Below are positions 6,033 through 34,474 of a DNA stretch of 64,000 nucleotides, one piece after another (positions within the stretch are counted from its first letter, which is position 1; each line of letters starts with the position of its first letter). The stretch covers positions 54,188,001-54,252,000 of the forward strand of contig NC_043014.1 in assembly GCF_006345805.1 (NCBI RefSeq), read 5' to 3'. Origin of the DNA: Octopus sinensis (lineage: Eukaryota). The notes below the pieces were generated by a model. It was given only the letters and a program-made list of their open reading frames with translations, ran no database searches and was not told the origin of the DNA. The position numbers and the translations under genes are program-made.

Positions 6033-6826
6033 GTATCTACACTTCATCCATTCGCAATATTTCTAATATCTACGCTACAGGATTCTCGCCTGCAAACTGG
6101 ACTTTCAATATCTGGTATGCCGTCTACGTATGGATGGCTGCCTGGCTTCTCTTCTGTGTGTCTACAATCTGTACTGTGAGCGGCGATAGTTACCTTTACC
6201 TTGAACCCGATGTGTTTCCCTCTAAGTTCTATCTGATCTTTGCCATCACCCTCTGCCTCAACATCAGCTGGTTCATCCTTTACGACCGATCCTTCTTCAT
6301 TGCTAGCTTCTTCGTGGCACTCACCATGACCGTCTTCTCTTTCACCACCCTTGGCATATCGATCTACTATCTCTACCTCTACGGGGACACACTAATTAAG
6401 AGCAGCTTTGGCACTCAGGCCTGTCTCATCCAGCTGCTCGTCCATAACGGCATTGCCTTCTTTGGCACCTGGGTCGCCTTGTTGATGCACATGAACCTGG
6501 ACATAGCCCTATACTACAGATGGGAGGTGAGCCGTTACATCAGCGACCTGGTTCCGCTCTGCATCCTGGTTGTTCTCATAGTCACCTGGTTCACCTTGGA
6601 CATAGCCATCCTCGACACCTTCACCCGGTATCTGCTCAGCCCTTACATCATGTTGGTGATTGTCTTCTCCGGGGTCGTTCATAAACAAGTTGATGTCAAC
6701 AGCATCGACAGAATTGGGATTGTTGTTCTGGTGATGCTAATTCTTAGTTCTGTGACTTTGGTGACCAAATTCCTTTTCATGATCTGGAGGCATTTCAATG
6801 GCCCACAGACTAGTCTCGCTGTGTAA
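6033..6826 (+). CDS. G1: terminal coding exon of a multi-pass membrane protein, TspO/MBR-related family (first exon not found)
   Basis: A TACTAAC branch point (6008-6014), pyrimidine tract and ttccag|GT ATC TAC give a phase-1 acceptor. The frame is open from GIYTSSIRNIS...SPANWTFNIWYAVYVW to TAA at 6824-6826. It has 7 hydrophobic segments and aligns almost without gaps to G2-G4. AATAAA occurs at 7501 and 7512. Confidence 0.9.
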
Positions 6827-6990
6827 AATCTCATGACTACTGAAACATGGAAAATACAATTTAAAACTGAAAAAGGACAATCATTCACTTATTAAGGTTT
6901 CAAAAAAAATTGTGAAATTCTATCTATATTTTTACTGAATTCCATTAATTTTTCCTATTATTATTATTATTATTATCATTATTATTATTA

Positions 6991-7443
6991 AGGTGGTGAA
7001 CTGGCAGAAACCATTAGCACGCTGGACAAAATGCTTAGCAGTATTTCGTTCATTGCTGTGTTCTGAGTTCAAATTCCAGCGAGGTCGACTTTGCCTTTTC
7101 ATCCTTTCGGGGTTGATAAAATAAGAGCCAGTTGAACACTGGTGTCAATGGAACTGACTTACCCCCCACCTTCCCCAAGTGCCCTTGTGGCAAAAATTTG
7201 AAATAATAATAATTATTATAATTATAATTAAGCTGGCAGAATTGTTAACATGTCAGACAAAAAATGCTGAGCAACATTTCTTCCAGGTCTTTACATTCCA
7301 AATTCAAATTCCACCAAAGTCGACTTTGCCTTTTTATTTTCCTTACAGAGTCAATAAAATATGTACCAGTTTTCTACTGGGGTTGATGTAATTGATTTAC
7401 CCCACCTCCCCCAATATTGCTGTACTTCTACCAAAATTTGAAA
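6991..7443 (+). mobile_element. Two tandem SINE family B copies with (ATT/AAT)n tails in the G1 3' region
   Basis: Two consecutive family B bodies at 6991-7205 and 7231-7443. Confidence 0.8.
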
Positions 7444-10400
7444 CAGTTATTATTGTTATTATTATTATTATTAATGCTGTTTTATTAATTTTTTTTAGTA
7501 AATAAATATAAAATAAACTTCCCAAATCTTGAACTTGTGTATTTTTGTGACAAATTAGTTATTATTGAAGTGGGTGCTTTTAATGTTGTTGCAGTTGTCT
7601 GCTATAAATTAAGGTTTTTATGCTATTGGGACAACAAGATTCTGTGTGTGTGTGTGTACGTACATATAATGTTACTGATTAGATGTTGTTGTTGATGTTG
7701 TGCATGTTGGACTGCTGTTTTCTTCTCTGCTTCTGTGGTGTTGGCATTGTTCTATGCATGTTTCTTCAGTAGTTGTGTTATATACATGCATGTATGCATG
7801 CACACATGCTCGCATATACATGTGTGGACTTTCTTTTTTCTAATCTACTCTGCAAACTACACTTTGGATTGTTCAACAGTTTGATTTGTGCAGTTCGGGC
7901 AGCCTTGATGAAAGGCATTTAACAAATGAGGAGCTGTGTTACCTCTTGAGAGTAGAGGTAGCTTTGAGGAATATGTCAGCTGAAATAAAGAAACATTTTG
8001 AGGAGCAAAGATGGCTAGGAAATTTATATAAAAAAAAGAGAAAATGCTTTAAGAATTTTATGAATAAAAAGAAAATATTTTTACAATTTAATCTAAATAT
8101 GCTACCGGTTTCAATACTTTTAAACCAATTTAGTCATGCTGTAAGAGAAAAAGAAATTACTATTTCATATATTCGGGAAGTCCACTTGTTTTTCTTAGAA
8201 AATTCTCATGGTACTGGTTGTTGTCTCCTTCTGATGGCTGCTGGATTGTAATATATATATATATATAAAGCTATAAAGTGACTCAAATGTTGAGTGTCAT
8301 GCATGGCATTTATGATCAGTGTAATGTATGAAAACCTCAGCCCTTGAGTCAGTTAACCCCAGGTCAATCTAAGCCACATGATTTGCTAGATGGAAAGTGA
8401 AAGAAAGCCATTGAATGTGGGTGTGTCTGCTTGTCTTGATGTCATGTGATAACTGTAAATGAGCCTCACCAGCATACAAGTCAGGTTGTTTGTTTCAATT
8501 CTTCCATAGAAATTTGTTCAGTGAATGGGAAATATTGCCATGCTTGGAAATAGGTGAGAGTTGGCAACAGGAAGGACATTTTGCCACTGAAAATCTGCTT
8601 CAACAAATTCCTTTCACCCCATGCACGCTTAGAAAAGGGACATTAAAATCATTATATATATATATGTATGTGTGTATATATATATATATAGATATGTAAT
8701 CGTAAGATCTAGGTATCTAGGTGTAGGAAGTGAGTAAGCTTCAAGCAGTCCGTGGTAGGTATAAAAAAATACAACTTTCAGAAATAATAATAGTTTAATG
8801 ACATGGAAGGTTGTAGGTTTTTTTCATATCAAAGTTCAATAAGCTGAAAAAAGTGTCTTTATAGTTTCCAGCAAGTAGGATTGCCATGAATGCAAATGAA
8901 AATCCAAATTGTGGCAATGAAGCAGGTAAAATCCTGACTACATATGTTTCCTGGCTAGCAGATCCTCGAAAGTAATAATTACTCAATAAGAGGGACTCCA
9001 CTAACGACTTTTAAATTATATCTCTGGCGAGTTAACTTGGGATTCCTTAATGACAATGTAATCTCCATTTAACTAAGGTATCTTCAGCCTGATGAGTAGC
9101 TAGTGGAGGACCCCCTCATTGAGTAATCATTACTTCCAAGGGTCTACTAGCTGGGAAACACATGTAGCCTTTTTTGTTTTTTACCTGCTCCATTCCCTCT
9201 ATTTGGATATAGATATATATATATATATTCTCTGATGAAGGGGGTTCTGCCTGAAATGCTTAACATTTCCCCCTTATTACAGAAAACCAGTTGATTCCTT
9301 TTTAAGAACTGTTTGGATTCACTAACTGCAAACACTGATCCTCGCTAGTTTCCTTGGACCCAAACATTTACTTCAGAATCCTCATATATTCCTGTAATGA
9401 ACAGGGTTGAAAAAGAATTGGTTTGGCTAGAAAACCCTGAACATCTAAGATTTCCTGCCTATTTAATAAAATTCTGTTGGTATTATGTATGTTTTCTGGT
9501 GGTGGGGTTTAACCCCGCACATCAACGCTGACCAAGCAGATCTATGATCAAAAGCATTCCAATCATGATGACCATCCCATCGTGTTTTTAAGATGGTACA
9601 GTGCTGTTTGAGGAAGAAGCTCAAGGGGTTTCTTTTTTCCCCTTTAAGAGAAATTTGACAAATTGAGCAAATCTCTCTCAGTCCTTTAACTTAAAGTCTG
9701 TCCAAGATGGAATGAAAGAGGAATAAACTTATAGAAAGGTCGGTGGGGGTGAGGCTCTGAATAATTAGCCTAACGAGGGGATGGGAGATTGTGTAAAGTG
9801 GCTTGTGTTATTAGTAGATAGTCTGATAGTTGCTCTAATTGCATACAACCTGTTTCAAAATAAAATTAGTAGAAGACCAGAGAGTCTTAAGTTTTACAGC
9901 ATCTTAGTGGCCACCACTTCAAAATCAGCAAATGATGATGATGGAGATATTGTAATCATATCTTAAAGATTTCATTGGCCATATTAGTTGGTGCCAGGAA
10001 ATTGAAAATGGTAACAGTTGTTGTTTAGCCCTGGGTCAATCCTGATTGAGGAAACCTATAACCAAAGACATTCCTGTCAGTTTCATCTTGATTATAACAA
10101 ACCAAGGGTCACATGATTCAACATGTATTTCTTTAGATTGGAACTTGAGGGAAATTTGGTTGCTATTTCTGGCAGGTTCACTCGTTGACTTGGATTCACT
10201 GAGTGAAAGATGTGATTTTTATCTTTTTCAAGTGGTTGTCCATTTTTAATATTAATAAAAATATTAGAAAATAAATTCAAAGATGGTAGACCCAGGGTGG
10301 TTAGAAATAGTAAGAGGTCAAGGGGTGTTTATGATAGCTATCATCATCATTTAACATCCAATTTTCCACGTTTGCATGGGTTAGACAAAATTTGTTGAGA

Positions 10401-10739
10401 CAGATTTTCTATGGCCAGATGCCCCCCTCCTGTTGTCAATCCTCACCCGTTTCCAAACAAGGTCATATTTCCCCATGACCAGATAGGTTCGTTGTGGAAC
10501 GTTCAAAATGAACAGCCTCACTTGTATGATGATGATGCTCATTTATAACTATCATGTGATGTCAGGACAACGGTACAAATCCCCACACACAATGGGCATC
10601 TTACAGTGTCTGTCTACTAAAGCCTTTGGTTGGCCTGGGGCTACAGAAAAAGGCACTTGCCCAAGGTGCTGCACAGTGTGCCCATTGAACCCGAGACCAC
10701 AGGGGTGGAAAGCAAGCTTCTTAACCACACAGCTATGTC

Positions 10740-10945
10740 TCATCATCATCGTTTAACAGCCTTTTTCTATGCTGGCATGGGTTGGACGGTTTGACTGAGG
10801 TCTGGAGAGTCAGCGGCTGCACCAGGCTCCAATCTGATCTGGCAATGTTTCTACAGCTGCATGCCCTTCCTAATGCCAACCACTCTGAGAGTGTAATGGG
10901 TGCTTTTTATGTGCCACTGGCACAGGAGCCAGTCAGGAGGGCCTG
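10740..10945 (-). mobile_element. RTE 3' UTR fragment
   Basis: catcatcatcgtttaac...ctgcatgcccttcctaatgccaacc matches the 3' UTR of the 141-1212 element. Confidence 0.8.
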
Positions 10946-12330
10946 TCATCGATCACATCCCTAATAAATCTTAAATTTAAATCCGTTACAAAACATTTGA
11001 TCCACACCCTTAATCCTATGTCCTTCAATTCATCTAGCTGTTGGGAGCAGAAATTGGGTCCCCAAGGAAGTGTTTCATAAGAAAGACTGGCACTAGTCCT
11101 TTTATGGTTGTTTGTCCTGTTAGAAACAGTAGCCAAATCATCCTGAAATGGCATCCTACCATAAAAAAGAAAGAAAGACACATTGGATAATGGAGTCTTG
11201 TAGGAATAAGCAGCGGAGAGTAGGAACATCTTTGACCATGGAGTTACTCCACCAGGGCTGACCAGGGGTTATACAACAGCTACCACCAGAATCTTAGGAA
11301 TTATTTATACAGGTGTGGGTATGGCTGTGTGGTTAAGAAGCTCACTTTGCAACTACCTGGTTTCAAGCTCAGTCCCACTATGTGGCACGTTGGTCAAGTG
11401 TTTTCTAGAATAAACCAGTTCCTTTTGAGTGGATCTGGTAGAGAGAAACTGTGTGGAAGCCTGCCATGGTTTATATATCCATGACTGAAACCAGTAAAAG
11501 ATAAAGAAGATACAGCAATGCATGTAAATGGCAGGTGTTGGATAAGAAAGTGTAGTGAAGGGTCAATGGAGAATTGGCTGAGAAAAGCTGAGGGGCTCTG
11601 AGAATTGAGTTTAGGGTTAGTCAGATGGACTGAGAAAGATTTAGGTTAAAATTATCGGAGGGGAGAGTTTGAGAAGTTAATGTTGGTAGTTGAATGTAAG
11701 GAGGACCGACTAAAAATGATCTGGGATGAGATGGTCAGCGTTAGGACCAAATAACTCAGAATAATAGAGAAGGTAGGAATTAGTTGAGGAAGCAAGGAGA
11801 GAATGCAGTTGGATGAGGGAGGAGGAAATTGAGAGGTCACACGATGTCAATCTAATAACAGGTAAGAATGAGTGCTGGTGAATGTTTTTCTATTGAAACC
11901 ATTCCACTGCAAAGACAGCAACAAATATTGAACCAATGGTGATGCTAATGGGTGTTAATATGGTAATTAAACTAAGGTGGCAAGCTGGCAGAATCGCTGG
12001 TTTGCCAAAATGCTTGGAGGCATTTCATCCAAGTTCAAATTCTGCTGAGGTCAACTTTGACTTTCATCCCTTTTGGGGTCGATAAAATAAGATCCAGTTC
12101 AGCATTGGCGGGGAAGGGGGTCAATGTAATTGACTTACCACCTTCCTCTGAAATTACTGGCCTTGTGCCAAAAATGGAAACCAAAATGGTAATTAAAGTA
12201 AAGTACAGGACATAATGAGAGAGAAGGGGGCAGCTGTTTGGATGTTGATGATTTGATAAAGCAGACTGGATGCTCAACCGGTTCTTGTGACAGCTAAACA
12301 CACACACATACATGTACAGAAATATATACA

Positions 12331-12663
12331 TAGGTGCAAGCATGGTTCAATCCCACTGCGTGGCACCTTGGGCAAGTGTCTTCTACTATAGCCTTGGGCC
12401 AACCAAAGTGTTGTGAGTGAATTTGATAGATGGAAACTGAAAGAAGCCCATCATATATGTGTGTGTGAGTGTGTGCCATCACAGCTTGACAACCAGTGTT
12501 GGTGTGTTTATGTCCCCATAATTTAGCAGTTCAGCAAAAGAGACTGATAGAATAGGCACCAGGCTTTTAAAAAACAAAAGAAAATATGTAGTGAAGTTGA
12601 TTCATTTGACCAAAGCATTGCCCCAGTATGGCCACAGCCTAATGACTGAAAAGAGTAAAAGAT
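12331..12663 (+). mobile_element. Older SINE family A copy
   Basis: Same modules as the young copies, more diverged, with a deleted head. Confidence 0.75.
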
Positions 12664-13026
12664 GAAAGGTGTAGAGGTAGAAGGAACATTTATATGTGTA
12701 AGCACAACTGGATGCTCACGCATAAGCAGAGAGGGAGGGAGAGAGAGAGACACCTATTGCAGTTTATTAAGGAAGGACAACTGGCAGGAACACTTGCCTG
12801 CCCCTGCTCAGAGACACAAAGAGAAATATGCTCAGAGGGAGAGAAACAGTAAGAAATGTGTCAGGTACGTCTGCGATGCCAACCAAGTGGTGCCAAAGCA
12901 TCTCAGATCCCTAGTGTAGGGGTTCAGCATGTACCCATTCTACTCTAGGCACAAGACCCGAAAATTTGGTGGGGTGGTGGTGGGGGTAGTCAATAAGATC
13001 AACCCCAATATGCCACTGGTATTTAA

Positions 13027-13248
13027 CCCTTTCATTACCAACCCAGCTGAATCCACTTCTGGCTCTGTAGTACAAATGTCTTGTTTTCATAAGTTCTGAA
13101 TTAAAAATCTCCCACCAAACCTTAGTCACAATTTATGTTCCTAACTCCAGTTTCATGATAATGAAGTTATTTTACTAAATTCTTTGTTATATTTAAAGTA
13201 ATTGAAAGAAACACATAGCATCTCAAAATAAATACAGTAACAAAAGGG
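13027..13248. mobile_element. piggyBac-type MITE, second family
   Basis: TTAA|CCCTTT...AAAAGGG|TTAA, 222 bp, the reverse of 63434-63653. Confidence 0.75.
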
Positions 13249-13669
13249 TTAATTTATCGACCCTGAAAGGATGAAAGGCAAAGTCGACCTCCACAGAATT
13301 TGAACTCAGACCGTAAGCATTTCGCCCGGTGTGCTAACGCTTCTGCTCAGCATAATGTTAGGTGAAAGAAGTGAGAGAGATGAAAATAAATATGTGGTTC
13401 ATTCGTCAGTGAATGGACTGAAAATGTGAGGTTGTAATCAAGTGAGCAAAGAGGAACTTGAGACAAAGAGTCAGGTGCTGAATGTGCAACTGATAGTTCA
13501 TTGCCAGAAGACTGAGGGGGTGGTCGTGGGTAGGCTTTGATGTACTGGTAGGGAGAAGTGGGTGCATTTCTTGGCTGTGCTCAATGGCAGTGTGACCTGG
13601 AATACGTGTTGAGGTAATTCTAGGTTGATAGCAGTTACACACACAAGCACAGGTGTGGCAGCGTGGTTT

Positions 13670-14065
13670 AAGAAGTCTGCTCCCCAGTTGCAGGGTTCCT
13701 GGTTCAGTCCCACTGCATGGCACCTTAGGCAAATGTCTTTTACTATAGTCCTGGGCCGACAAAACCTTTGAGTGAATTTGGTTGACAGAAACTGACAAAA
13801 GCCTGTCATGTGTGTGTGTGTGTGTGTGTTAAGTGTCTCCCTGTATTGACACCATGTAACAGCTGTAAACGAGTGTCACTGTCATACAAGCAGTGTCATT
13901 CATTTCCAATATTCTGTAAGAACAAGTCTGGCACTGGCAATGAGGAAATATTTACCTTGCTTGGAAGCATGTAAGGGTTGGCAACAGGAAGGGCATCCTG
14001 CCATAAAAAATATGCATTGGTAAAGTACAATCAAACCATGCAAGCATAGAGAAGTGGACATCGAA
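13670..14065 (+). mobile_element. SINE family D (family A head plus RTE-like 3' tail)
   Basis: The head is as in family A. A different body ends in ggcaacaggaagggcatcc...catgcaagcatagagaagtggac...gatgat. Relatives lie at about 8340-8650 (+), 10340-10740 (-), 38077-38465 (-) and 58430-58840 (-). Confidence 0.75.
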
Positions 14066-14623
14066 ACACTGATGATATATATATATATAACGTAAAGTAT
14101 AAAAGCCATCTCAATATGGCTAACCACAAAGTGGGGGTGTTACTGTAGCTTTTAGCCCCAAGAGATCGACGTCTCCAGCTGGCTTTAGACACACTTTCTG
14201 TACCCTTCAGGTATTTGCAAAGGGAAGCCATCCCTTCCTCGTAAGCCTTAGTGATACGCACCGCGCTCTGAGATTTAATAATGCTATATATATAAACTGG
14301 CCGAGTGTCCAAAGTTTATATATATATGTATATATTCACGTTAATACTGAGCAGTGAGAAGTGCTGAGCACCACATTGGTGGATTTTTTTTTCTTTTTCA
14401 TAGGATATCTGGACTCCCATTGCTTCCATTGAAGTCTGTCACAAGGTGTTTTATCCAAGATAGAGATGAACACCAGCATCCCATGTGACAGACATGAATA
14501 GCTGTTGAGAAATATCTCTCTCAACATGGAGGCAATGGTAGTCTGACTATCACACAAAGTATAGATACATTGCTAATATACGACATAAATATCAACCTAC
14601 TGGTGTGTGTGTGTGTGTGTGTA

Positions 14624-14826
14624 CAAGGTGGTGGTGAAAAGTTTCTGGCTTTGGGTAAAAGAAAATAGAGGAGGTTGAGTTGATTATGGTTTTATTCAAC
14701 ATAATCCCACACTTATTGCAGCAGTCCTTCAGTTTTTCTATGCTCTTTAAAAGAACTGAGAATATGGGCCTCCAACCAGGCCTTTTGCGATAGCCTTAAA
14801 GCCAGGAACTTTACAGCACCCCACTC
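14624..14826. mobile_element. Mariner-type MITE
   Basis: Imperfect terminal inverted repeats: ggtggtgaaaagtttctggcttt versus aaagccaggaactttacagcacc. Confidence 0.65.
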
Positions 14827-14850
14827 AAATATGTATCATATATATATATA

Positions 14851-15139
14851 CTAGCAGTATCACCCAGCGTTGCTCGGGTTTGTAAGGGAAATAACTATAT
14901 AAGCATTTTTAGAGAGTTATTTCCCTTATATAACCCGAGCAAAAATCATTAAAAATGCGGAAAAATGATGGTAAATTTTTTTAAAATCATAGACTCATCG
15001 TAGACGCGCGCTAATACCCAGATGGGCTCGATGTGAATGATGACTATAAGATACCTGGTTTTGGTTAAACTGCACCGCAAAATGTGGGAGTAGTTAGGAA
15101 TCTAAATCGGAGGAGACAGAGTCCCACACACACAACTTC

Positions 15140-15145
<6 letters not shown>
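14851..15145 (-). mobile_element. Second copy of the same Helitron family
   Basis: It has a CTAG|T end with hairpin acccg-agcaacgc-tgggt, and its body closely matches 36502-36898. The 5' end runs into (TA)n. Confidence 0.8.
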
Positions 15146-15185
<40 letters not shown>

Positions 15186-15511
15186 TAACACACATACGTG
15201 TATATATATATAATAACAGGCTGAAAAGAGAAATGAGATTTGGGACAAATTCAGGATGGCTTCTAGATGTTCGGTTTCTTTTGTCAACTCAGGTCATGTA
15301 GTGATATTGCTGTTGAAGTGACTGGGGTTCTTTTCTTTTGTTTCTTAGGCCCTCATGCTTGAATAGGATGTTGGCAGGTATCTGTCACCACTATGTCTGC
15401 AGGCTGTAGTATAGTGTAACCAGCAACACCTGTTCACTGCATTTCATACCACACTTGGTAAGGTGGGGCATTGTTGTGTTAGTAGCTCTGTGGCTTCTCA
15501 ATGGAGCTTAA

Positions 15512-15730
15512 CCCTTTACTGTTCACATTATTCTGCCCAAATTAATGCTTTTTTTATCCACATTGTTTTGAACTAATCAGGCATTAATCTTGGTGCTAGA
15601 TTTTGATGAGGTAGCTGTAATTTTTAAAACGATAGTGTAGGGTTGGTGTGAGAGACCAGATCTGGCTAGTTTGAACATAAAACAGGCAGAATACTTTTGG
15701 CCGGATATGGCCAGTTTAAATGCTAAAGGG
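15512..15730. mobile_element. piggyBac-type MITE, family G
   Basis: TTAA|CCCTTT...AAAGGG|TTAA, 219 bp, no coding capacity. Confidence 0.8.
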
Positions 15731-18856: not shown

Positions 18857-19641
18857 GTATCTACACAGCCACCATGTCAAATGTATCTAATGAGTTTATG
18901 ACTGGGGTCACTCCAGCTCGATGGACCTTTGGCATCTGGGGAGTAATCTACTTCTGGATGGCTGCCTGGATCATCTACTGCCATGCTGCTATCTTCATTA
19001 AATGGGATGGTGATTACTTGTATAAACATGATGTATTTGCACCTAGCATCTTTTTCATCCTTTACAGCATCAACTTGATCCTCAATTTCACTTGGCTCAT
19101 TCTCTTTGACAGAAAGCAAATTGTTGCTGCTCTCTTTGTTCTCCTTGCATTGGCAATAACTGCCGTTGCATGCCTATGCATAGCTATGTACGCGTTCAAG
19201 AAGGGAATGCAAAACATAGCCCGAGAGGAATTCAAGCTTCACTTCTGGCTCATCCAACTCCTAATGTTCAACGGCATTGCCTGTTATGCTACATGGTTGA
19301 CCGTAGCCACAAACCTGAATCTCAATATAGCTCTGACTTATGCATGGGGCTTTAATGGAGATACAGTTATCCTTATCATCCTGCTTTTTATTGGTGCAGC
19401 AATTATTTCAGCAGACATGATTATCTTTGAGAAACATACTATTTACGTCATCACACCTTATATAGTACTGGTGGTTGCCCTCTATGGCGTTGTTGATGAA
19501 CATGTTGATATAGAGGACTTGTCTCGTATTGGTATATTCATGATAGTTGTACTGGCCCTCTTCTGTGGTGGTCTTCTATATAAAATTGTTTCAACAATTT
19601 GGAATCACTTCCGATGTCGACGGCCTGCAGCACTAATCTAG
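18857..19641 (+). CDS. G2: terminal coding exon, same family
   Basis: A long pyrimidine tract and ttctag|GT ATC TAC give a phase-1 acceptor. The frame GIYTATMSNVS...TPARWTFGIWGVIYFW...NGIACYATW...KIVSTIWNH is open to TAG. It is 3 codons shorter than G1. The ORF-track start at 18805 is intronic. Confidence 0.9.
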
Positions 19642-24782: not shown

Positions 24783-24818
<36 letters not shown>

Positions 24819-26129
24819 GGCGGTGCCTCAGCATGGCCACAGCTCATGAGCTGAAACTAGAATCAATCAATCATATATATATATATATATATATATGTAT
24901 GAATGTGTATATATATGTATGAATGTGTATATATATGTATGAATGTGTATATATATGTATGCATGTGTATATATATATGTATATATATATATATATATAT
25001 ATACACATACACACACACATCCAGTTTACCTTCTCCATTTTCTTTTTCCATTTCTTTCTCCTCTTGTCTATCCTTCCCTCTTTTCAGAAGAAGAGTGAAT
25101 ACTCAAAACATAAAAGACATGCTCTTCTTTTTTTGCCAGTTCTTTATTGTCAACCTCTTTTTTGTCCCCTTTTTTTTTTTAACTCTATTGTATTTTTTGC
25201 ACCATACACACACACACACAAGCTTTTTGTATAACTACAAACCTATATTTGTATTTCTAATTTGGTTTGGCAATAAATATTCTGATGCACAGACGATGAT
25301 ATTGTATTTGTTTTTTCACTTTGATACCCCTGTGGCAAATAAAAGAAAATTGTTTTATTACTTTTACTCATTCATTCAAATTTTTATATTCTGAACTCAT
25401 TTCCTCCCGAGGTTGACTTTGCCTTTCATTCTTTCAGGGTCAATAAAATAAGTACCAGTTATGCACTGGTGGTTGATGCAATCGACTTACCACTCCCTCT
25501 AAACTTGCTGGCCTTTGGAACAATTATTATTATTATTATTATTATCAACGTGGTGAGGTAGTAGAACCGTTAGCACATCAGGCCAAATGCTTAGCAGCAT
25601 TTTGTCCATCTTTACATTCTGAGGTCAAATTCCGTCAAGGTTGACTCTGCCTTTCATCTTTTCGATGTCAACGGAATCAATTTACCTCCTCCCTCAAAAT
25701 TTCAGGCCTTCTGCCTATAGTAGAAAAAATTACTATTATCATTATTATTATTCGTGATCTGAGTAATACATGAAGAGATTTTTTTCCTGACCCAGGAACC
25801 TAGGTACATCTTGGAGCATGAATATGCAGAGAAGAGTCCAAGGTTAACAAAGGAGTTCATGAGTAAAGAAAATGTCCAAGGGTATCACAGCATGTCCAAC
25901 ATTAACAAATATTCTGTGTTATAAAGCCCTAACAATGTTTACAGATCTTCGTACTGCTGTTTTCAGGAACATGCCTACGCCCACCTTAGAGGGAATTTAT
26001 CAATGCCCTTACAGAAATAGTTATGTATCACTCCAGTTTAACTAATTACCTATATGCTCATTAGACGCAAATTAACAGCTAGGTTGGGGTCATTGAGCTT
26101 CTTTCAACTCCCATAATCACTTTTATATT

Positions 26130-27230
26130 TAACTTTGTCAAAGATTGATGTACTTACAGCCCATGGTGAGGAGTTTTGGGACCATATGCAATGTCATGAG
26201 TGTTGCCAGAATTTTAGGGCAGGAAGGACATCTACCAAAGATGATTGTATGTGTGGATGGCTTTCTACATTAACAGACGAGGATGACATTGTGAAAGTGT
26301 TTGTGGGGAACCATGGAAACCATGACTTATTATCCATGGAGTTTCCCAAGAAGCAGGCATTCGTACAAGTCCATGGCACATAAGTTTAAAAGAAATATTG
26401 AAGATGCATCGTGTCACTGCTAAATTTGTGCTGTATCTGATGACAGATGAACAAAAAAGAGAACTGGGCCACATTCGAGTGCTGATGAGAATTTTCTGTT
26501 GAGTTTCCTAAATAGCGCAGGAGTGGCTGTGTGGTAAGTAGCTTGTTTACCAACCACATGGTTCCGGGTTCAGTCCCATTGCGTGGCACCTCGGGCAAGT
26601 GTCTTCTGCTATAGCCCCGGGCCGACCAAAGCCTTGTGAGTGGATTTGGTAGACGGAAACTGAAAGAAGCCCATCGTATATATGTATATATATATATGCG
26701 TGTGTGTGTTTGTGTGTCTGTGTTTGTCCCCCTAGCATTGCTTGACAACCGATGCTGGTGTGTTTATGTCCCCGTTACTTAGCGGTTCGGCAAAAGAGAC
26801 CGATAGAATAAGTACTGGGCTTACAAAAAGAATAAGTCCTGGGGTCGAGTTGCTCGATTAAAAGGCGGTGCTCCAGCATGGCCGCGGTCAGATGACCGAA
26901 ACAAGTAAAAGAGTAAAGAGAGTAAAGGTAATTAAACATGGCTGCATGGAAGTGTGGCAGTAATGTTGGAATGGTGAGGCAGCCATTGTAGTAAACTGGA
27001 TCCTCATCAAAGAAGAATAAAGCATATCAAAGTCGCTCAAGTGTGACGGTGATGTTGGTCTTTTAATGAATAGAAAGGTCGTTGTTCATCATGTGTTTGT
27101 TGTATGGAATCAGGGAATCAATAAGGCAAGGTGCAAGGGATTTCTTTATTCCACAGGTTTTTGACAGCAAAGAATGACATGGGGGTGTCAGCACTGGCAT
27201 CACCTCACTCAAGAGGTTCAGGGTACAACA
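26130..27230 (+). mobile_element. Decayed mariner transposase remnant split by a SINE (26515-26926)
   Basis: The fragments NFRAGRTSTKDD, LKMHRVTAKFVLYLMTDEQK and RSSVTVMLV resemble mariner FKxGRTSxxDD, RVxAKFVPxLLTxEQK and KxMLxVFF. Confidence 0.75.
26515..26926 (+). mobile_element. tRNA-derived SINE family A, young copy
   Basis: A-box-like tggctgtgtggt and B-box-like ggttcagtcc, followed by a ggcaccttgggcaag-like core, a central (TA/TG)n and an (aaagagt)n tail. Confidence 0.9.
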
Positions 27231-27400
27231 TAAACACACACATTTCTATACATATTGGGTGCATATTGTGGATCCATTAATCTGAACATTTTGTTGCTTT
27301 GTGGTACCTTCTTATCATTAACAGGGTCATGATAATGAGCAGGAATGTTGAATTCCATGTGATTCTGTTGTCTTCACAATTTCTTCAAGAATACACACAT

Positions 27401-27791
27401 GCCCATAGTGGCTGTGTGGTAAGTAGCTTGCTTACCAACCACATGGTTCCAGGTTCAGTCCCACTGCATGGCATCTTGGGCAAGTGTCTTCTGCTATAGC
27501 CCCGGGCCGACCAATGCCTTGTAAGTGGATTTGTTAGACGGAAACTGAAAGAAGCCTGTCGTATATATGTATATATATATGTGTGTGTGTGTGTGTTTGT
27601 CCCCCTAGCATTGCTTGACAACCAATGCTGGTGTGTTTACGTCCCCGTCACTTAGCAGTTCGGCAAAAGAGACCGATAGAATAAGTACTGGGCTTACAAA
27701 GAATAAGTACCGGGATCGATTTGCTCAACTAAAGGCGGTGCTCCAGCATGGCTGCAGTCAAATGACTGAAACAAATAAAAGAGTAAAAAGA

Positions 27792-27793
<2 letters not shown>
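27401..27793 (+). mobile_element. SINE family A
   Basis: Near-identical to 26515-26926. Confidence 0.9.
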
Positions 27794-27828
<35 letters not shown>

Positions 27829-28044
27829 GTAAATCCAAAAAAGAACAAACAGCATGAGGATGTGGTACATGTAAAGTATTAGCAGACGTTTAGGGAAGGA
27901 AAGAAAGATAGTTTAATATTTCAAGCAAAAGCTCTTCTTCGGAATCTTCAGAAACAGAGGAAAGTCCAATAGAAAGGAAGACAGAGAAAGAAAATCGACA
28001 ACGATTCACATGTGGTTACATATGTATATATGTATATATATATA

Positions 28045-28435
28045 CTAGCTGATGTACCCAGTAATTCCCAGGAAAGCGGGGCTTATCACTTGGTTCCGTT
28101 CTCATAATTGTTTCGCTAATCCAGTAACAACAATACAAAGTATGTAGCCCTTAAAACAGTTGTGCATTTACAGAGAAAACCAAACTGTCTTACAAAGGAT
28201 CTTGTTTCTAGGAATTCCCAATAAGTTATGAATACCGAAATTATGAAGTCAGTTATGTAATAACATGAAATTAGTTACCCGATAGTAAGAATTCAAATTA
28301 AGTAGTCCCCAAAAGGGCTTTAATGTGTTCCCAGAGTATATAGAACATAGGAGGAAATACTAAGGTATGTATACCAAAATTCTGAAGCATGTTACGTAAT
28401 AAATGATTGTAGTGCAAACCATTTGGATAAAAAAA
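28045..28435 (-). mobile_element. Probable Helitron-like element of another family, truncated by a SINE
   Basis: The a|ctagctgatgtaccc terminus sits in a (TA)n context, the same layout as the other Helitron ends. Confidence 0.4.
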
Positions 28436-28583
28436 GTGTGGTAAGTAGCTTGCTTACCAACCACATGGTTCCGGGTTCAGTCCCACTGCGTGGCATCTTG
28501 GACAAATGTCTTCTGCTATAGCCCCAGGCTGACCAATGCCTTGTGAGTGGATTTGGTAGATGGAAACTGAAAGAAGCCCGTCG

Positions 28584-28616
<33 letters not shown>

Positions 28617-28847
28617 ATGTATGTGTGTGTATATGTTTGTGTGTCTGTGTTTGTCTCCCTAGCATTGCTTGACAACCGATGCTGGTGTGTTTACGTCCCC
28701 GTCACTTAGCGGTTTGGCAAAAGAGACCGATAGAATAAGTACTGGGCTTACAAAAGAATAAGTCCCGGGGTCGAGTTGCTCGATTAAAGGCGGTGCTCCA
28801 GCATGGCCGCAGTCAAATGACTGAAACAAGTAAAAGAGAAAAGAGTA
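28436..28847 (+). mobile_element. SINE family A (slightly 5'-truncated)
   Basis: Near-identical to 26515-26926. Confidence 0.9.
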
Positions 28848-29850
28848 GTGTACACTTGCTTTTTTGTATTGAGTACTACATATGAACGTAATCAACTTCA
28901 ATTGAACCAATTTCAGTGAAGACATGAAGTGTGTGTGTGTGTGTGTGTGTGTGAACTATTTGATAATATAGTTTCTATTGTCAGATAACTCTAACATACG
29001 TAACACTGGGTGTATATATATATATATATAACTACAGCTTTATAAGTCCTGGCTGTGTAGAACAATAGGAGCTGCTGCTGCCATTTGAGTGGTTTATTGT
29101 TGAAAGCCAGCGACATCAGTTACATAACAGCTTGTGAACAATACTGGTTACGTAAACGTTTAACTTTGATCTTACATAACAACTGTTTTCCACCCGAATG
29201 TTCTGGAACCATTTAAATCGGGTGGAGAGTCAGACAAAAAAACACACACACTGTGCTATTTTATTTACGTTCACCAATCTCCTGTCCAAAAGTTCAAATC
29301 CTGCCCAAGTCAAACTATGCCTTTCAGCTATATTTACTTGAGCCCTTCGTGCTCCCTTATGGGGCACAGAGAATTCTGGGTCGTCTTTTTTGCTTCCCTC
29401 CAGTTGGATCCCTGTTTTTCGCTCTACTTCTCTATTATCCTACCTCCAGTTCTTCTTTAGGGTTTCCTCTCTTCGTCACCCTTGCAGATTCTTGACCGGG
29501 GGCCTAAACGTGTAAATAACGATTCCTTGATGGAAGCTCTTCCTATCTCTCACAAATCTTGTTAGTCTTCAGTTATCCATTAACAGTGACTAGGGACGAC
29601 TTTCGGAACAGCTGCCCCTATAAATTGAAATTTCTCCATTTTGGCCAGGATTTTTCCAGATTAAATTTTTTTATATATATTACACATTTTAAAATTAAAA
29701 CAAAAAGGAAATTATTTGGCGATCCTTCGGTATTGGTCTACAGAGTATGGTCTGCATGAGGAGACCATTATTCACCGTCTTTTCCATCCTTACTTCTGTC
29801 GTTCAGAAAAGTTGAGGACGAATGGACGTCGTCGACCATTACCGAAGGAT

Positions 29851-30059
29851 TACTCTTTTACTTGTTTCAGTCATTTGACTGCGGCCATGCTGGAGCACCG
29901 CCTTTAATCGAGCAACTCGACCCCGAGACTTATTCTTTGTAAGCCCAGTACTTATTCTATCGGTCTCTTTTGCCGAACCGCTAAGTAACGGGGACGTAAA
30001 CACACCAGCATCGGTTGTCAAGCAATGCTAGGGGGACAAACACAGATACACACACACAC

Positions 30060-30134
<75 letters not shown>

Positions 30135-30298
30135 TACGACGGGCTTCTTTCAGTTTCCGTCTACCAAATCCACTCACAAGGCTTTGGTCGGCCCGAGGCT
30201 ATAGCAGAAGACACTTGCCCAAGATGCCACGCAGTGGGACTGAACCCAGAACCATGTGGTTGATAAACAAGCTACTTACCACACAGCCACTCCTGCGC
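29851..30298 (-). mobile_element. SINE family A
   Basis: Reverse complement of family A with a long central (TA)n. Confidence 0.9.
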
Positions 30299-31828
30299 CT
30301 ATTTTGCACAGATTTTTGCTTGAAGCATCGCATTTTTCTCCTTTTAACGATATCTTTCATTTTATTGTTGCATTCCATATTCTGAAATATTTGGAATTCG
30401 AATTAAAATGAAATTTTTTAAATTCCTACTTCTTCCTACTCTGATCATACATTTCGCAATTAAAATTTTTTTTTTCTTCAATTTTGTTTTCTTTTTTCAT
30501 ACTTTTGCCATTCCAGCCCAAGTGACCATCCACACCGAAATTATTTCCTCATAACTGTCAGAAAGAATACAGAAAGACCTTGGTGGTTGCAGACAGACAT
30601 ACACTTTCATTTTGTAGATATTCGTGTGTTTCTTTTTACATTAAATTACTTCTATATTCGTAATCTTCTCTATCTGGAAAGTAATTGTAAAATTTCATTA
30701 AAAAATCATCCATTTTCAGAAAGTTACGAGGAAGGAACATTCGGTGGTGAAGGTCACTTGTGTTGGAAGGCCAAGCTTTTTTTTTTTTCTATACGGCATA
30801 AAAATTGAATAAAGAGAATTAAAACAAGAATATAATAACACTTACCTTATTTAGTTGACATAATTCTCATCAAATTTAATTTCATAACTCGTTTTTCTCA
30901 CCTTCCACACAAAACTAAACAGAAAGACATAAACAGTTTTGTTTTTCAGTCAGAGATGTTTTGGGGCCTCATTTTGCTTTTCTTCAATTAAAAAATATTC
31001 TTTTCTACATTCAAAATGACTGAGATTGTCATTTTATAGATACTTCTTTCAAAATGTTATTTTGTTTCGTCATTTTTTGTGGCAGAAACAAAACAAAAAA
31101 AGAGTCGTCCTTCGTTTCTAATCAGGAAGAAAGATACAATGGCGCGGGGGAGGGGGAGTGTAAAGATCGAACCAGCTTTTTTTTGTTTTTTTGTTTTCTA
31201 AAATAATTCGTATTCCAAAAATTTCAGAATGTAGATTAAATATAATAAAATGGCGTGAAATAAATTAAAATGTATTTAAAAAAAAAAAGAAAACTATAAT
31301 GGTGATTGTTGTTCTGAAGAGACACGATAAGGTGATGGCGGTGGTTGGGGGGGGGGAATATGGATGAATTTTTTTTCCTTTTAAGTTGTTCCCCATCTTA
31401 TTGTTATGAAATATGTATTAAAAAGATATTTGGATAACTTCCAACTAAAACAGAAATGTTCTATCGTATGTAGGTCAGGTATTCCAAAAGTCAACCCAAG
31501 TCAGAGACTGAGGTCGATATTGACTCTAATCCTTCACCAAATTTACTGTCCGTGAAAGAAACTGGGAAGGTTTTTGGTTGATATTTGCAAAGGGATTGAT
31601 AATGAAACCCAAACAATACGGGAGGAATATAAAAAATACACTTGCGTAACCGGAGTAATACTTAAAAGTCACTGATTAAATGCCATTGTTACTCATTTTC
31701 TAAAAACTGTTGTACAAACATCGTACAAAAAGAATGCACTTCTTATAAATATATTTGAAAGTAATTGCAAATTGAAAACTTATTTAAATACCCATGCAGA
31801 CGTATTTACTATATTATGTAGATAGATA

Positions 31829-32050
31829 AGGCGGCAGAAACGTTAGCACCCCGGGCGAAATGCTAAGCAGAATTTCGTCTGCCGTTACGTTCTGAGTTCA
31901 AATTCCGCCGAGGTCGACTTTGCCTTTCATCCTTTCGGGGTCGATAAATTAAGTACCAGTTATGCACTGGGGTCGATGTAATCGACTTAATCCCTTTGTC
32001 TGTCCTTGTTTGTCCCCTCTATGTTTAGCTCCTTGTGGGCAATAAAGAAA
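31829..32050 (+). mobile_element. tRNA-derived SINE family B, young copy
   Basis: ggcagaaacgttagcac head, gagttcaaattcc B-box and cctttcatcctttcggggtcgataaattaagtaccag core. Confidence 0.85.
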
Positions 32051-32602
32051 TATATATATGTAGATAGATGGTGAGAGAGAGACATATATGCACACACTTT
32101 TTGTCTCACAAACAAGAGAAAGAGTTCTAGATAGATGTTTGTGAGTTTAGTGATTGACTCCTTTGCTTTTTAAATTTTGTTGGTGGGATCTTTTAGAAGA
32201 CAACAATAACAACAGACCATTTTTGTTATTTATAATTATAAGTTTAAAAGCAGACTTTTGTGAGGAGAACCACCATTATCCAAATTACTAATTCTGGTTA
32301 AAAACAACAACAACAAAAGATAATGGGAACAACTGTGAAATTTTAATGTAAATTAATTGAATATAAAATACAGTTGGAGAATAAGTCTGACATTCTAACA
32401 GGATAAGTTTCAATGTTATTGGACCTCATCAGCTAAGCATGGTCTAACTATTACTGCGGAACTCAAACGATTAGAGCAGTAAATCATATGGTTCTGTATG
32501 AACACATCCTTCATCCACTTTACTATCAAGTTTTCATGCAGCAGAAACCCTGCATATTCCCCCCAGTCATTTCATGTGTGTGTGTTTATATATATATATA
32601 TA

Positions 32603-33025
32603 TCATCATCATCATCATCGTCCATTTTCCATGCTAGCATGGGTTGGACGGTTTGATTTGGGTCTGTCAAGCCAGGAGGCTGCACCAGGCTCAGTCTGAT
32701 CTGGCAAGGTTTCTACAGCTGGATGTCCTTTCCTAACGCCAACCACTCTGAGAGTGTAGTGGGTGCTTTTTACATGCCACCAGCACAGGAGCCAATCAGG
32801 CGGCACTGGTACCAGTCACATGTTACCTGGTACAGAAGCCAGTCAGGGCGAGGAGAGCTAGCACCCGCCACGTTCGGATGGTGCTTTTTACATGCCACTA
32901 GCATGGGGAGTTGATGAGGCGGCACTGGCAACGACCCACACATGAATGGTGCTTATTGCATACCACTAGCCAGTGTCACCTGACTGGCTCCCCATGCAAG
33001 TGGCACATAAAAAGCACCATTCAAC
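32603..33025 (-). mobile_element. RTE 3' UTR fragment with an expanded internal repeat and an inverted 5' end
   Basis: Matches 141-460. The gtgctttttacatgccac-like unit is repeated, with one inverted copy at about 32995-33022. Confidence 0.8.
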
Positions 33026-33061
33026 AATAAAGTATATATGCTATTTATCTCTCTCTCACTT

Positions 33062-33094
<33 letters not shown>

Positions 33095-33114
<20 letters not shown>

Positions 33115-33116
33115 AA

Positions 33117-33172
<56 letters not shown>

Positions 33173-33230
33173 TAGATAGAGAGAGAGAGAGAGAGATAGA
33201 AAGAGAGTGAGAGAGATAGAGAGAGAGAGA
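33095..33230. repeat. (TA)n-(GA)n microsatellite
   Basis: Direct reading. Many other (TA)n, (CA)n, (GA)n and (AAT)n tracts occur, e.g. 15143-15180, 22878-22925, 45566-45622, 46190-46270, 50900-50962 and 59450-59640. Confidence 0.95.
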
Positions 33231-33683
33231 TTGAGTAGACCTAATATCAAAGGCATGCTGGCCTCACCATCCTCATCTATTTGTAATTCTTGGACTTCCC
33301 TTTTCCAATGTGTCCTTCTTGTTTTAAGGCTATAGAATGGGATCTGTGGACATTTCATTGTTATTACAAACCAATCAAACAACAACATAAAGGCTCCTTC
33401 GTTGGCAATGGTACAATGGACCTTCAAGGAACCTTGTGGCATTGTCTGTTAGCCACACAAATTAGGGGCCCAGGAAGGTTCCAATAGGTGTTTCTGACAC
33501 AGAAATAGGTACAGCATCCCACACTCAATACAAGAAAGGTAAAAGGTAATGGCATAATTGTGTTTTGATTAGATTTTCTTTGGTATTTTTCTTGTTGTTG
33601 TTTTCTAATTCCTCTATTGATGTCTTTTCCCTTCCTTCCTTCCTTTCTCCATACTTACCTGCCTCATTTTGATTTAATTTCAG

Positions 33684-34474
33684 GTATTTACACGACTGAA
33701 ACAGGAAATGTGTCTGATTTTTACCCAACCCGACTCACACCAGCTGGCTGGACCTTTAGCATTTGGGGTTTCATCTATTTCTGGATGATTCTGTGGCTTG
33801 TATACAGTATAGTGGCCATCTTTTTGAAAGTCGGCAACGAATACGTTTACACCAGCATCATCTTCATGCCATGCCTTTTCTTCTTCATCTATTCCGTCAA
33901 CCTGCTCCTCAATATCTCTTGGCTCATTCTCTTCGACCGGAAGCTGTTCATAGTCAGCCTTTTTGTGGCGCTGTTCATGTTCGTCAGTGCGGTCACCTGT
34001 ATCAGCATTTCATGCTACGTCCTCACCAACAATTATGACCTCATCAATGAAACAAAGCTCTTTGTCCACGTCTGGCTCATTCGCTTTTTCGTGCAGAATG
34101 GCATCGCATTTTATGCGGCATGGCTGTTAGTTGCCACTCACTTAAACTTAGACATCGCAATGCGTTACTCCTGGAAAGTTGACCCGGATACCTGTGACCT
34201 CACTGCCATCATCATGATCCTCGTCATCATCTCCACCTGGTTCCTTCTCGATGTTATTGCCCTTGACAACTACACACGTTACCTGTTCAGCGAGTACATA
34301 GTGTTCATCGTTGCCTTCTGTGGTGTGGTCTACAAACAGCTGAATACAGATGTCTATGACCGAATAGACGTTTTGATTCTGATCTGTTTGTCTGCCAGTG
34401 GGGCATTCTTTGTTTTCAAGATGGCCATTCTCCTCTGGAGACACTTCAGGAAGTCTTCTTATATAACATATTAA
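33684..34474 (+). CDS. G3: terminal coding exon, same family
   Basis: tttcag|GT ATT TAC is a phase-1 acceptor. The frame GIYTTETGNVS...TPAGWTFSIWGFIYFW...QNGIAFYAAW...KMAILLWRH is open to TAA. AATAAA occurs at 34691. Confidence 0.9.

What the first reader, a model, noticed from the sequence alone, without database searches (positions are those of the whole stretch)
6033..34474. Three intact ~790-nt terminal exons share one phase-1 acceptor position but have no visible first exon: possible alternative-last-exon array
Seen: G1, G2 and G3 all begin ag|GTAT(C/T)TACAC (G-I-Y-T) at the position homologous to the G4 intron-1 acceptor. All are open and end in their own stop, and G1 and G3 have nearby AATAAA. 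G4 shows the family needs a ~106-nt TM1 exon ending in G|GT. I scanned 1-6032, 6827-18856 and 19642-33683 by eye for an ATG-hydrophobic helix-G|GT exon and found none. Inference: one first exon upstream of the window may be spliced to any of three divergent 7-TM bodies. That would be the mirror image of clustered protocadherins (constant 5', variable 3') and would give mutually exclusive membrane-protein isoforms. The simpler alternative is that short, diverged first exons exist and I missed them.
Basis: partly seen in the sequence, partly recalled or inferred. Interest (0 to 1): 0.75.

Follow-up and report, generated by a model that had tools for sequence, protein, structure and literature searches.

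The report
Octopus gene with three alternative bodies
One octopus membrane-protein gene joins a single small exon, encoding the first membrane helix, to any one of three diverged end exons that each encode the other seven helices; cuttlefish relatives share the arrangement, and public gene models already show it.

Summary

- **Source.** The window is Octopus sinensis CM016876.1.
- **Units.** G1 (6033-6826), G2 (18857-19641) and G3 (33684-34474) are intact, 38-41% identical reading frames. Each starts at a phase-1 acceptor (ag|GTAT) and ends in its own stop.
- **Missing exon.** It lies 6.74 kb upstream of window base 1. It has 106 coding nt (MEHRPAKIAV...SSS-G) and ends G|gtaaga.
- **No other first exon.** It is the only exon of this type that a family profile finds in the 67 kb upstream and in the window on the + strand.
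- **Existing models.** RefSeq models (O. sinensis LOC115221323 X1-X5; O. bimaculoides LOC106877552 X1-X3) already join this exon to each body.
- **Conservation.** Argonauta keeps the same layout: one first exon, three bodies in the same order, and G4 convergent.
- **Transcripts.** Cuttlefish-type transcript contigs with different bodies share a 128-nt stretch (this exon with a few flanking bases), identical base for base.
- **Selection.** The bodies are under purifying selection (dN/dS 0.07-0.18) and keep every family-invariant residue.
- **Protein.** It is an uncharacterised 8-helix membrane protein with a weak TspO/MBR match.

This is an alternative-last-exon array, a known kind of architecture in an unusually extreme form. 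It is annotated but has not been described in the papers searched.

The parts
6033..6826 (+). G1: proximal alternative terminal coding exon (263 codons plus stop). It encodes TM2-TM8. It is the body of RefSeq isoforms X1/X4 of LOC115221323.
   Evidence: Acceptor ccag|GT preceded by a ctactaac branch-point-like motif kept in three octopods. 94% identical to O. bimaculoides isoform X1. Argonauta ortholog 78% identical, dN/dS 0.07. The intron from the shared donor is 12,776 nt.
18857..19641 (+). G2: middle alternative terminal coding exon (260 codons plus stop). It is the body of isoform X3. It evolves fastest and was found only in octopods.
   Evidence: 100% identical to XP_036366977.1. The only unit with a Pfam TspO_MBR match above the cut-off (28.9 bits against 24). 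dN/dS 0.18 against another octopod. Argonauta ortholog intact, 51% identical. The intron from the shared donor is 25,600 nt.
33684..34474 (+). G3: distal alternative terminal coding exon (262 codons plus stop). It is the body of isoforms X2/X5.
   Evidence: 93% identical to O. bimaculoides isoform X2 and 75% to the Argonauta protein. dN/dS 0.07. AATAAA 217 nt after the stop. The intron from the shared donor is 40,427 nt.
56595..56700 (-). G4 exon 1: own TM1 exon of the convergent paralog, a separate gene. It is the structural template for the missing exon.
   Evidence: ccag|GCAAG ATG ... TGT G|gtaagt, 106 coding nt. Best TM1-profile hit in the window, E 0.056.
50505..50877 (-). G4 exon 2: first half of the body. 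Its acceptor is at the position homologous to the G1-G3 acceptors.
   Evidence: tttcag|GA CTT TTT. tblastn hits of G1-G3 residues 1-111/124. The donor GA|GTGAGT is inferred.
46544..46997 (-). G4 exon 3: second half of the body, with the stop. G1-G3 have no intron at this position.
   Evidence: tctag|T CTT GGC. tblastn hits of G1-G3 residues about 123-257. Argonauta ortholog 86% identical on the minus strand downstream of its G3.

Best explanation
G1, G2 and G3 are three alternative last exons of one gene, O. sinensis LOC115221323.

How it works:
1. Transcription starts upstream of the window.
2. A 111-nt internal exon lies 6.74 kb before window base 1. It carries the ATG and the first transmembrane helix, and it ends G|gtaaga in phase 1.
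3. Its single donor is spliced in cis to one of three acceptors 12.8, 25.6 or 40.4 kb downstream.
4. Each acceptor opens a roughly 790-nt exon that encodes the remaining seven helices, its own stop and its own 3' UTR.
5. Use of one body therefore excludes the others by construction. None of the bodies needs a donor, and no constant exon follows them.

The products are three 296-299-residue, 8-helix membrane proteins. They share only 36 residues and are 38-41% identical over the rest.

Shown here: the exon layout, the single TM1 exon, conservation of the layout, purifying selection on all bodies, and spliced transcripts for the G1-type and G3-type junctions in a decapodiform.

Inferred: the choice depends on competition between splicing plus polyadenylation at the proximal unit and continued elongation to the distal ones, and it is regulated by tissue or cell type. 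The biochemical role is unknown. The family is a conserved metazoan group (zebrafish si:dkey-29d8.3) with a weak TspO/MBR-like signature.
For: - The window equals L001 at offset 67016, and three called products share one start.
- The TM1 exon is at L001 60162-60272, with a consensus acceptor and donor.
- O. bimaculoides isoforms X1, X2 and X3 have an identical N-terminal peptide, MLEHRPAKIAVIVVTLIIFIVTAVLNAYASQPDSSSG, on three different bodies. O. sinensis X1-X5 do the same.
- There is only one TM1-profile hit per locus in O. sinensis and in Argonauta.
- Argonauta keeps exon 1, G1, G2, G3 and a convergent G4 within 26 kb.
- The acceptor position and phase are conserved in four cephalopod genomes.
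- Transcript contigs L002 and L017 are 100% identical over about 128 nt spanning the TM1 exon. They diverge on both sides of it, into a G3-type and a G1-type body.
- A decapodiform genomic contig has the two bodies 17 kb apart with no TM1 exon between them.
- dN/dS is 0.07, 0.18 and 0.07.
- All nine family-invariant residues are kept in each body.
- The tree places the G1/G3 split before the octopod-decapodiform split.
- The AlphaFold2 model has pLDDT 92.7 and 8 helices.
Against: - No octopus RNA reads could be examined. For O. sinensis the junctions rest on RefSeq models whose read support I cannot see.
- G2 has no decapodiform ortholog in my data. Its junction is supported only by gene models: RefSeq X3 and O. 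vulgaris CAI9738014.1. The O. vulgaris pipeline also used protein alignments (PMC10700109).
- The two decapodiform transcripts come from different sequencing runs. That they are from one species is inferred from the perfect exon identity.
- Poly(A) sites are unverified, and the first AATAAA after G2 is 1.6 kb from its stop.
- Regulation and function are inference.
Confidence: 0.87

Rival explanations
1. The units are three separate genes. Each has its own short, highly diverged or non-homologous first exon between the units, and the shared-exon isoforms are gene-model artefacts.
For: RefSeq and EVM models can chain an orphan exon to the nearest compatible donor. G4, the neighbouring paralog, does have its own TM1 exon. 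That exon scores only E 0.056 with the family profile, so a more diverged one could escape.
Against: - There is no + strand profile or tblastn hit between the units in O. sinensis, Argonauta or the decapodiform contig.
- No colinear conserved DNA or translated block lies between the bodies of O. sinensis and Argonauta. Only dispersed repeats match.
- Decapodiform transcripts carry the same exon, identical base for base, on two bodies.
Confidence: 0.05
2. The isoforms are made by trans-splicing, as at Drosophila mod(mdg4). The bodies are transcribed from their own promoters, and their acceptors are joined in trans to a separately made 5' transcript.
For: - The architecture, common 5' exons plus variable 3' exons, matches mod(mdg4), where the variable exons have independent promoters (PMC6237743, PMC13490949).
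- The introns are long (12.8-40.4 kb).
- The decapodiform G1-type and G3-type transcripts differ in their 5' UTRs.
Against: - All three bodies lie downstream of the donor on the same strand in every genome examined, so ordinary cis-splicing suffices.
- No conserved intronic element was found between O. sinensis and Argonauta.
- The only opposite-strand copy, G4, has its own first exon.
Confidence: 0.05
3. Only one body is really used. The others are unexpressed relics of tandem duplication that annotation pipelines pick up.
For: I saw no expression data for the octopus. G2 evolves fast (51% identity to Argonauta).
Against: - All three frames are intact in O. sinensis, O. bimaculoides and Argonauta.
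- dN/dS is 0.07-0.18.
- The invariant residues are retained.
- Both decapodiform body types occur in transcript assemblies from many runs.
Confidence: 0.03

Closest known systems
Alternative last exons (splicing-coupled alternative polyadenylation), as a general class
   Same: One upstream donor and several downstream terminal exons, each with its own acceptor, stop and 3' UTR. The exons exclude one another without any special mechanism.
   Different: Typical cases change a C-terminal tail or the 3' UTR. Here the alternative exons are ancient tandem duplicates, and each encodes about 88% of the protein, seven of eight membrane helices.
Drosophila mod(mdg4) and lola (common 5' exons plus many alternative 3' exons)
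   Same: A constant N-terminal module is joined to one of a tandem series of homologous variable C-terminal modules (PMC6237743, PMC4387717).
   Different: - Those are nuclear BTB proteins with variable FLYWCH or zinc-finger ends (my knowledge).
- mod(mdg4) isoforms arise by trans-splicing from independent promoters, some on the opposite strand.
- Here there are three units, all in cis orientation, and the constant part is a single membrane helix.
Clustered protocadherins, UGT1A and insect Gr28b/Gr39a (variable 5' exons, constant 3' exons); from my own knowledge
   Same: A tandem array of large, homologous, single-exon variable units is spliced to a constant part, one unit per mRNA.
   Different: The polarity is reversed. 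There the variable exons are first exons with their own promoters, and choice is made at transcription initiation. Here the variable exons are last exons, and choice must be made at splicing and polyadenylation.
Anopheles gambiae GSTD1 (aggst1-alpha), one 5' exon with alternative 3' coding exons; from my own knowledge, not retrieved
   Same: A shared 5' coding exon is spliced to one of several tandemly duplicated 3' coding units, giving enzymes that differ over most of their length.
   Different: It is a soluble enzyme in insects, from an unrelated family.
TspO/MBR family (PF03073)
   Same: G2 and 6 of 51 family members match the Pfam model, best E 5.7e-06. The match covers model positions 32-143, a Trp-rich membrane core.
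   Different: - The predicted protein has 8 helices, against 5 in TSPO (my knowledge).
- G1 and G3 do not reach any Pfam threshold.
- There is no PDB hit by profile or by fold.

Membership tests
Alternative-last-exon gene architecture | A single shared upstream exon and donor serves all the alternative units. | tested here: met
   One TM1 exon at L001 60162-60272 ends G|gtaaga. It is the only profile hit in 67 kb upstream plus the window on the + strand. Argonauta also has only one.
Alternative-last-exon gene architecture | Each alternative unit starts with a 3' splice site and cannot supply its own conserved start or first exon. | tested here: met
   Canonical acceptors sit at the same phase-1 codon in four cephalopod genomes. 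In-frame stops lie 22-118 nt upstream, and there is no conserved ATG.
Alternative-last-exon gene architecture | Each unit ends in its own stop codon and polyadenylation site. | tested here: inconclusive
   Own stops are confirmed. AATAAA hexamers lie 527, 1633 and 217 nt downstream, but no 3'-end data were available. Decapodiform transcripts show separate 3' UTRs.
Alternative-last-exon gene architecture | mRNAs exist that join the shared exon to each alternative unit. | tested here: inconclusive
   This is met for the G1-type and G3-type bodies in decapodiform transcript contigs. For Octopus, and for G2, there are only gene models: RefSeq X1-X5 and O. vulgaris CAI9738014.1. Reads cannot be mapped with these tools.
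mod(mdg4)-type trans-spliced locus | Variable 3' exons are transcribed from their own promoters, some on the opposite strand, with a conserved intronic element that promotes trans-splicing. | tested here: not met
   All three units are co-oriented and downstream of the donor. No conserved intronic block exists between O. sinensis and Argonauta. Own promoters cannot be tested here.
Dscam-type mutually exclusive internal exons | The variable exons are flanked by constant exons on both sides, and docking-selector RNA pairing makes the choice. | tested here: not met
   No constant exon follows, since each unit ends in a stop. The duplex energy between the post-donor region and the pre-acceptor regions is no better than for shuffles, a crude test.
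Protocadherin/UGT1A-type variable first-exon cluster | The variable units are first exons with their own promoters, spliced to constant 3' exons. | tested here: not met
   The variable units begin with acceptors and end with stops, and the constant part is 5'.
TspO/MBR (PF03073) | The sequence matches the Pfam model above the gathering score. | tested here: inconclusive
   G2 scores 28.9 bits against a cut-off of 24. G1, G3 and the two G4 fragments give no match. 6 of 51 homologs match at E<0.1.
TspO/MBR (PF03073) | The protein has a five-helix TSPO fold. | tested here: not met
   The AlphaFold2 model has 8 helices. Foldseek against the PDB gave no hit with E below 0.4 and no TSPO entry among the 50 matches listed. 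The PDB profile search found nothing.

The most novel reading that the evidence does not exclude
The array is an ancient, coleoid-wide device for switching the identity of an 8-helix membrane protein cell by cell. In this reading the choice of terminal exon is coupled to the choice of 5' exon or promoter.

In the decapodiform data all 14 G1-type transcript contigs carry one 5' UTR. The single G3-type contig, from what looks like the same species, carries a different one directly upstream of the shared exon. That would make the locus a natural cis-spliced model of promoter-dependent last-exon selection. The exchanged part would be almost the whole protein.
Probability: 0.15. Interest if true: 0.6.

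Novelty: new member of a known kind. Interest (0 to 1): 0.45.

Why it matters
- **Extreme case of a known kind.** Alternative last exons normally trim or swap protein tails. Here one small exon encoding the first helix is shared by three seven-helix bodies. By the tree, the bodies diverged before octopuses and cuttlefish or squid separated, and they are still under purifying selection.
- **Reversed polarity.** It is the reverse of the protocadherin/UGT1A design. It applies the lola/mod(mdg4) design to a multi-pass membrane protein, apparently in cis.
- **Experimental use.** It is a compact system, 16.5 kb in Argonauta, for asking how a splice donor chooses among distant terminal exons. It could also show whether cephalopod tissues use the choice to diversify an uncharacterised, widely conserved membrane-protein family.
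- **Annotation.** Gene finders that lack the shared exon report truncated 230- and 255-residue proteins, for example UniProt A0A0L8GDF9 and the A. pharaonis entry CAE1283133.1.

Tried and rejected
- Own first exons between the units. tblastn with five N-terminal peptides and two TM1-exon profile HMMs on all six frames found only the upstream exon and G4 exon 1.
- Conserved exons or regulatory blocks between the bodies. blastn and tblastx of O. sinensis against Argonauta intervals gave only dispersed repeats.
- Docking-selector RNA pairing. RNAduplex on 600-nt regions was no better than shuffles. The test is crude, with mononucleotide shuffles and long global duplexes, so it is weak negative evidence.
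- Octopod transcript evidence from Logan contigs P0002 and P0084. Both proved to be genomic contigs with the intron attached, from run SRR11869385. They served only for acceptor conservation and dN/dS.
- The same isoform type in bivalves and a chiton. Their 'isoform X1/X2' pairs fall in one 90% cluster each and differ only in N-terminal length, so they are not alternative bodies.
- Function. Searches of NCBIfam, PDB sequences and PDB folds gave nothing usable. Rfam and tRNA scans of the window were empty.
- Literature. No paper in the library mentions LOC115221323, LOC106877552 or dkey-29d8.3.
- O. vulgaris and Dreissena loci could not be fetched.


Full report
**Where the window comes from.** Forty-base probes from five window positions match locus L001 exactly, all at one offset (window p = L001 p + 67016). 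L001 is Octopus sinensis CM016876.1:54,120,985-54,217,641. The G2 body is 100% identical to XP_036366977.1, 'uncharacterized protein LOC115221323 isoform X3'.

**The observation.** It is correct.
- The three + strand units begin ccag|GTATCTACAC (6033), ctag|GTATCTACAC (18857) and tcag|GTATTTACAC (33684).
- They read open for 263, 260 and 262 codons, each to its own stop.
- They are paralogs at 38-41% protein identity.
- Each frame is closed 22-118 nt upstream of the acceptor.
- G1 has no ATG before body codon 34. The ATGs available to G2 (body codon 6) and G3 (33620, in the polypyrimidine tract) are not kept in Argonauta.

G4 is a convergent minus-strand paralog.
- Its own TM1 exon is 56700-56595, 106 coding nt ending G|gtaagt.
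- Its exon 2 acceptor (50877) sits at the homologous phase-1 Gly codon.
- It has one further intron that G1-G3 lack.

AATAAA hexamers follow the stops at 527 nt (G1), 1633 nt (G2) and 217 nt (G3).

**Where the missing exon is.** Full-length homologs all carry about 36 N-terminal residues that form a membrane helix before the conserved Gly.
- tblastn of the O. sinensis N-terminus finds it at L001 60158-60274.
- The sequence there reads tttcttttgcag|CCAAC ATG GAA CAC ... AGT TCG G|gtaagac.
- It is therefore an internal exon, L001 60162-60272, with 106 coding nt in phase 1.
- It lies 6.74 kb upstream of window base 1.
- The introns to G1, G2 and G3 are 12,776, 25,600 and 40,427 nt.
- RefSeq X1-X3 add one more coding exon about 50 kb further upstream (MASSPRD...). 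X4 and X5 start at the MEHRP methionine.

**Is it the only one?** I built a profile HMM from the TM1 region of non-cephalopod homologs. I ran it on every stop-to-stop fragment of at least 20 codons, in six frames, of the window, L001, the Argonauta locus and a decapodiform contig.
- It gave three hits: L001 60071-60334 (E 5e-10), Argonauta L016 9872-10144 (E 3e-12) and G4 exon 1 (E 0.056).
- Everything else was noise at E of about 1 or more.
- No further body copy exists between L001 10001 and G1, or on the + strand after G3.

**Gene models.**
- O. bimaculoides LOC106877552 X1 (G1 ortholog, 94%), X2 (G3, 93%) and X3 (G2) share the identical peptide MLEHRPAKIAVIVVTLIIFIVTAVLNAYASQPDSSSG and then diverge.
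- O. sinensis X1/X4 carry G1, X3 carries G2, and X2/X5 carry G3. The three called products share one start.
- An O. vulgaris model (CAI9738014.1) joins the same exon to G2. That annotation used Iso-Seq, RNA-seq, protein alignments and ab initio prediction (PMC10700109), so it is only partly independent.

**Comparative genomics.** Argonauta hians keeps the whole layout in 26 kb.
- Exon 1 is at 10001-10109.
- The G1 ortholog is at 13731-14519.
- The G2 ortholog is at about 19117-19921, taking the acceptor read and the ORF.
- The G3 ortholog is at 25744-26535.
- The G4 ortholog lies on the opposite strand.

All three bodies are intact there. Between O. sinensis and Argonauta only these exons are colinearly conserved. 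The other matches are dispersed repeats, at DNA and at translated level.

The acceptor stays at the same codon and phase in O. sinensis, a second octopod (genomic contigs L022 and L026), Argonauta and a decapodiform contig. G1 keeps a ctactaac-type motif upstream of its acceptor in the three octopods.

The decapodiform genomic contig (ENA ERZ21867824 ctg116473l) has a G1-type and a G3-type body 17 kb apart on one strand. No TM1 exon lies between them or in the 9.9 kb upstream.

**Transcripts.** Short Logan contigs that encode full-length proteins are spliced mRNAs from decapodiforms. The cluster of P0003 contains an Acanthosepion pharaonis protein.
- L002 carries a G3-type body and L017 a G1-type body.
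- They are identical at every base from 4-5 nt before the ATG, through the TM1 exon, into the first 12 nt of the body, about 128 nt in all.
- They are unalignable upstream of that stretch and about 70-75% identical downstream of it.
- The ortholog from a closely related species (L003, 97% protein identity to L017's product) differs at several sites within the same exon. Perfect identity therefore argues for one species and one exon.
- This is direct evidence that one exon is spliced to two bodies at the orthologous acceptors. The identity break 4-5 nt before the ATG matches the exon's own acceptor in Octopus.

**Are all bodies functional?**
- dN/dS is 0.07 for G1 and 0.07 for G3 against Argonauta, where dS is saturated. 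It is 0.18 for G2 against the second octopod.
- All nine residues that are invariant in a 51-sequence metazoan alignment are present in G1, G2 and G3.

**Age.** In a neighbour-joining tree with 200 bootstraps:
- the array bodies of octopods and decapodiforms form a clade that excludes G4 (100%);
- G1 groups with decapodiform body 1 (94%);
- G3 groups with decapodiform body 2 (64%);
- G2 is octopod-only in my sample and its position is unresolved.

The G1/G3 duplication therefore predates the octopod-decapodiform split. Bivalve and chiton 'isoforms' differ only at the N-terminus, so I have no sign of the array outside cephalopods.

**The protein.**
- AlphaFold2 on the alignment gives a confident model (pLDDT 92.7, pTM 0.89) with eight long helices. 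Helix 1 comes from the shared exon and helices 2-8 from the body.
- G2 passes the Pfam TspO_MBR cut-off (28.9 bits against 24), and 6 of 51 relatives match weakly.
- The PDB holds no detectable relative by profile or by fold.
- The family includes zebrafish si:dkey-29d8.3, amphioxus, brachiopod, annelid and mollusc proteins.
- It has no paper in the searched library.

**Mechanism.**
- Shown: one donor and three co-oriented terminal exons, each with its own stop.
- Inferred: ordinary cis-splicing, in which commitment to a proximal acceptor and its poly(A) site competes with elongation to the distal units. This gives one body per mRNA with no special exclusion device.
- I found no conserved intronic element and no better-than-random RNA pairing between the post-donor and pre-acceptor regions.
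- Trans-splicing as at mod(mdg4) (PMC6237743, PMC4387717, PMC13490949) is not needed and has no positive support. It is not excluded.

**Verdict.** The feature is a real, conserved alternative-last-exon array. The kind is known and the locus is already modelled this way in RefSeq, but the case is extreme: about 88% of a multi-pass membrane protein is exchanged. I could find no description of it in the searched papers.

Noticed in passing
L002 1-111 versus L017 1-365 (decapodiform transcript contigs); also L003-L011 and L018-L021: All 14 G1-type transcript contigs, from two close species, carry one 5' UTR type. The single G3-type contig that shares the identical TM1 exon carries an unrelated 5' UTR directly upstream of that exon. 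This could mean that 5' exon or promoter choice is coupled to terminal exon choice, but it rests on one contig.
   Followed up: partly
window 6975-7400, with copies near 2960-3116, 12032-12175, 25383-25664, 31833-31989, 41224-41394, 47987-48153, 51198-51985, 61773-61891, 62280-62654: A dispersed element of about 160-170 nt occurs in a dozen or more copies on both strands at 66-87% identity. It starts aaggtggtgaactggcagaaaccattagcacgctggac and often sits next to (ATT)n runs. It looks like a SINE. ARAGORN and Rfam do not call it.
   Followed up: partly
window 13406-13798(-), 26386-26748(-), 55256-55699(-): Three long ORFs share the peptide ...[11 protein letters not shown](K/E)VP(C/R)(S/N)GTEPGT... 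They belong to another dispersed repeat that also matches Argonauta introns at several places. They have no Pfam match and are not exons of the gene.
   Followed up: partly
window 691-1071(-): A 126-codon ORF (MTKGLSLRVKGRLYDACVQTAMLHGSETWAV...) resembles, from memory, the C-terminal part of retrotransposon reverse-transcriptase proteins. Pfam gave no hit.
   Followed up: partly
L001 10001-10096 (about 57 kb upstream of window base 1): RefSeq isoforms X1-X3 add a coding exon (MASSPRDIPNARAQTKPNGNNPNLVPSTVAS) 50 kb upstream of the TM1 exon. It is absent from the O. bimaculoides and Argonauta models. It may be a real alternative 5' exon or a model extension.
   Followed up: no
window 50880-50990(-) and 6956-6995(+): Long (ATT)n/(AAT)n microsatellites lie directly upstream of the G4 exon 2 acceptor and in the G1 3' flank. 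The one upstream of G4 produces the poly-Leu stretch in the mechanical ORF 50501-51025.
   Followed up: no
public protein records for this locus: Several database entries for this family are truncated at the first in-frame Met of a body because the shared exon was missed. Examples are the 255-residue A0A0L8GDF9 (O. bimaculoides G2) and CAE1283133.1 (A. pharaonis).
   Followed up: partly
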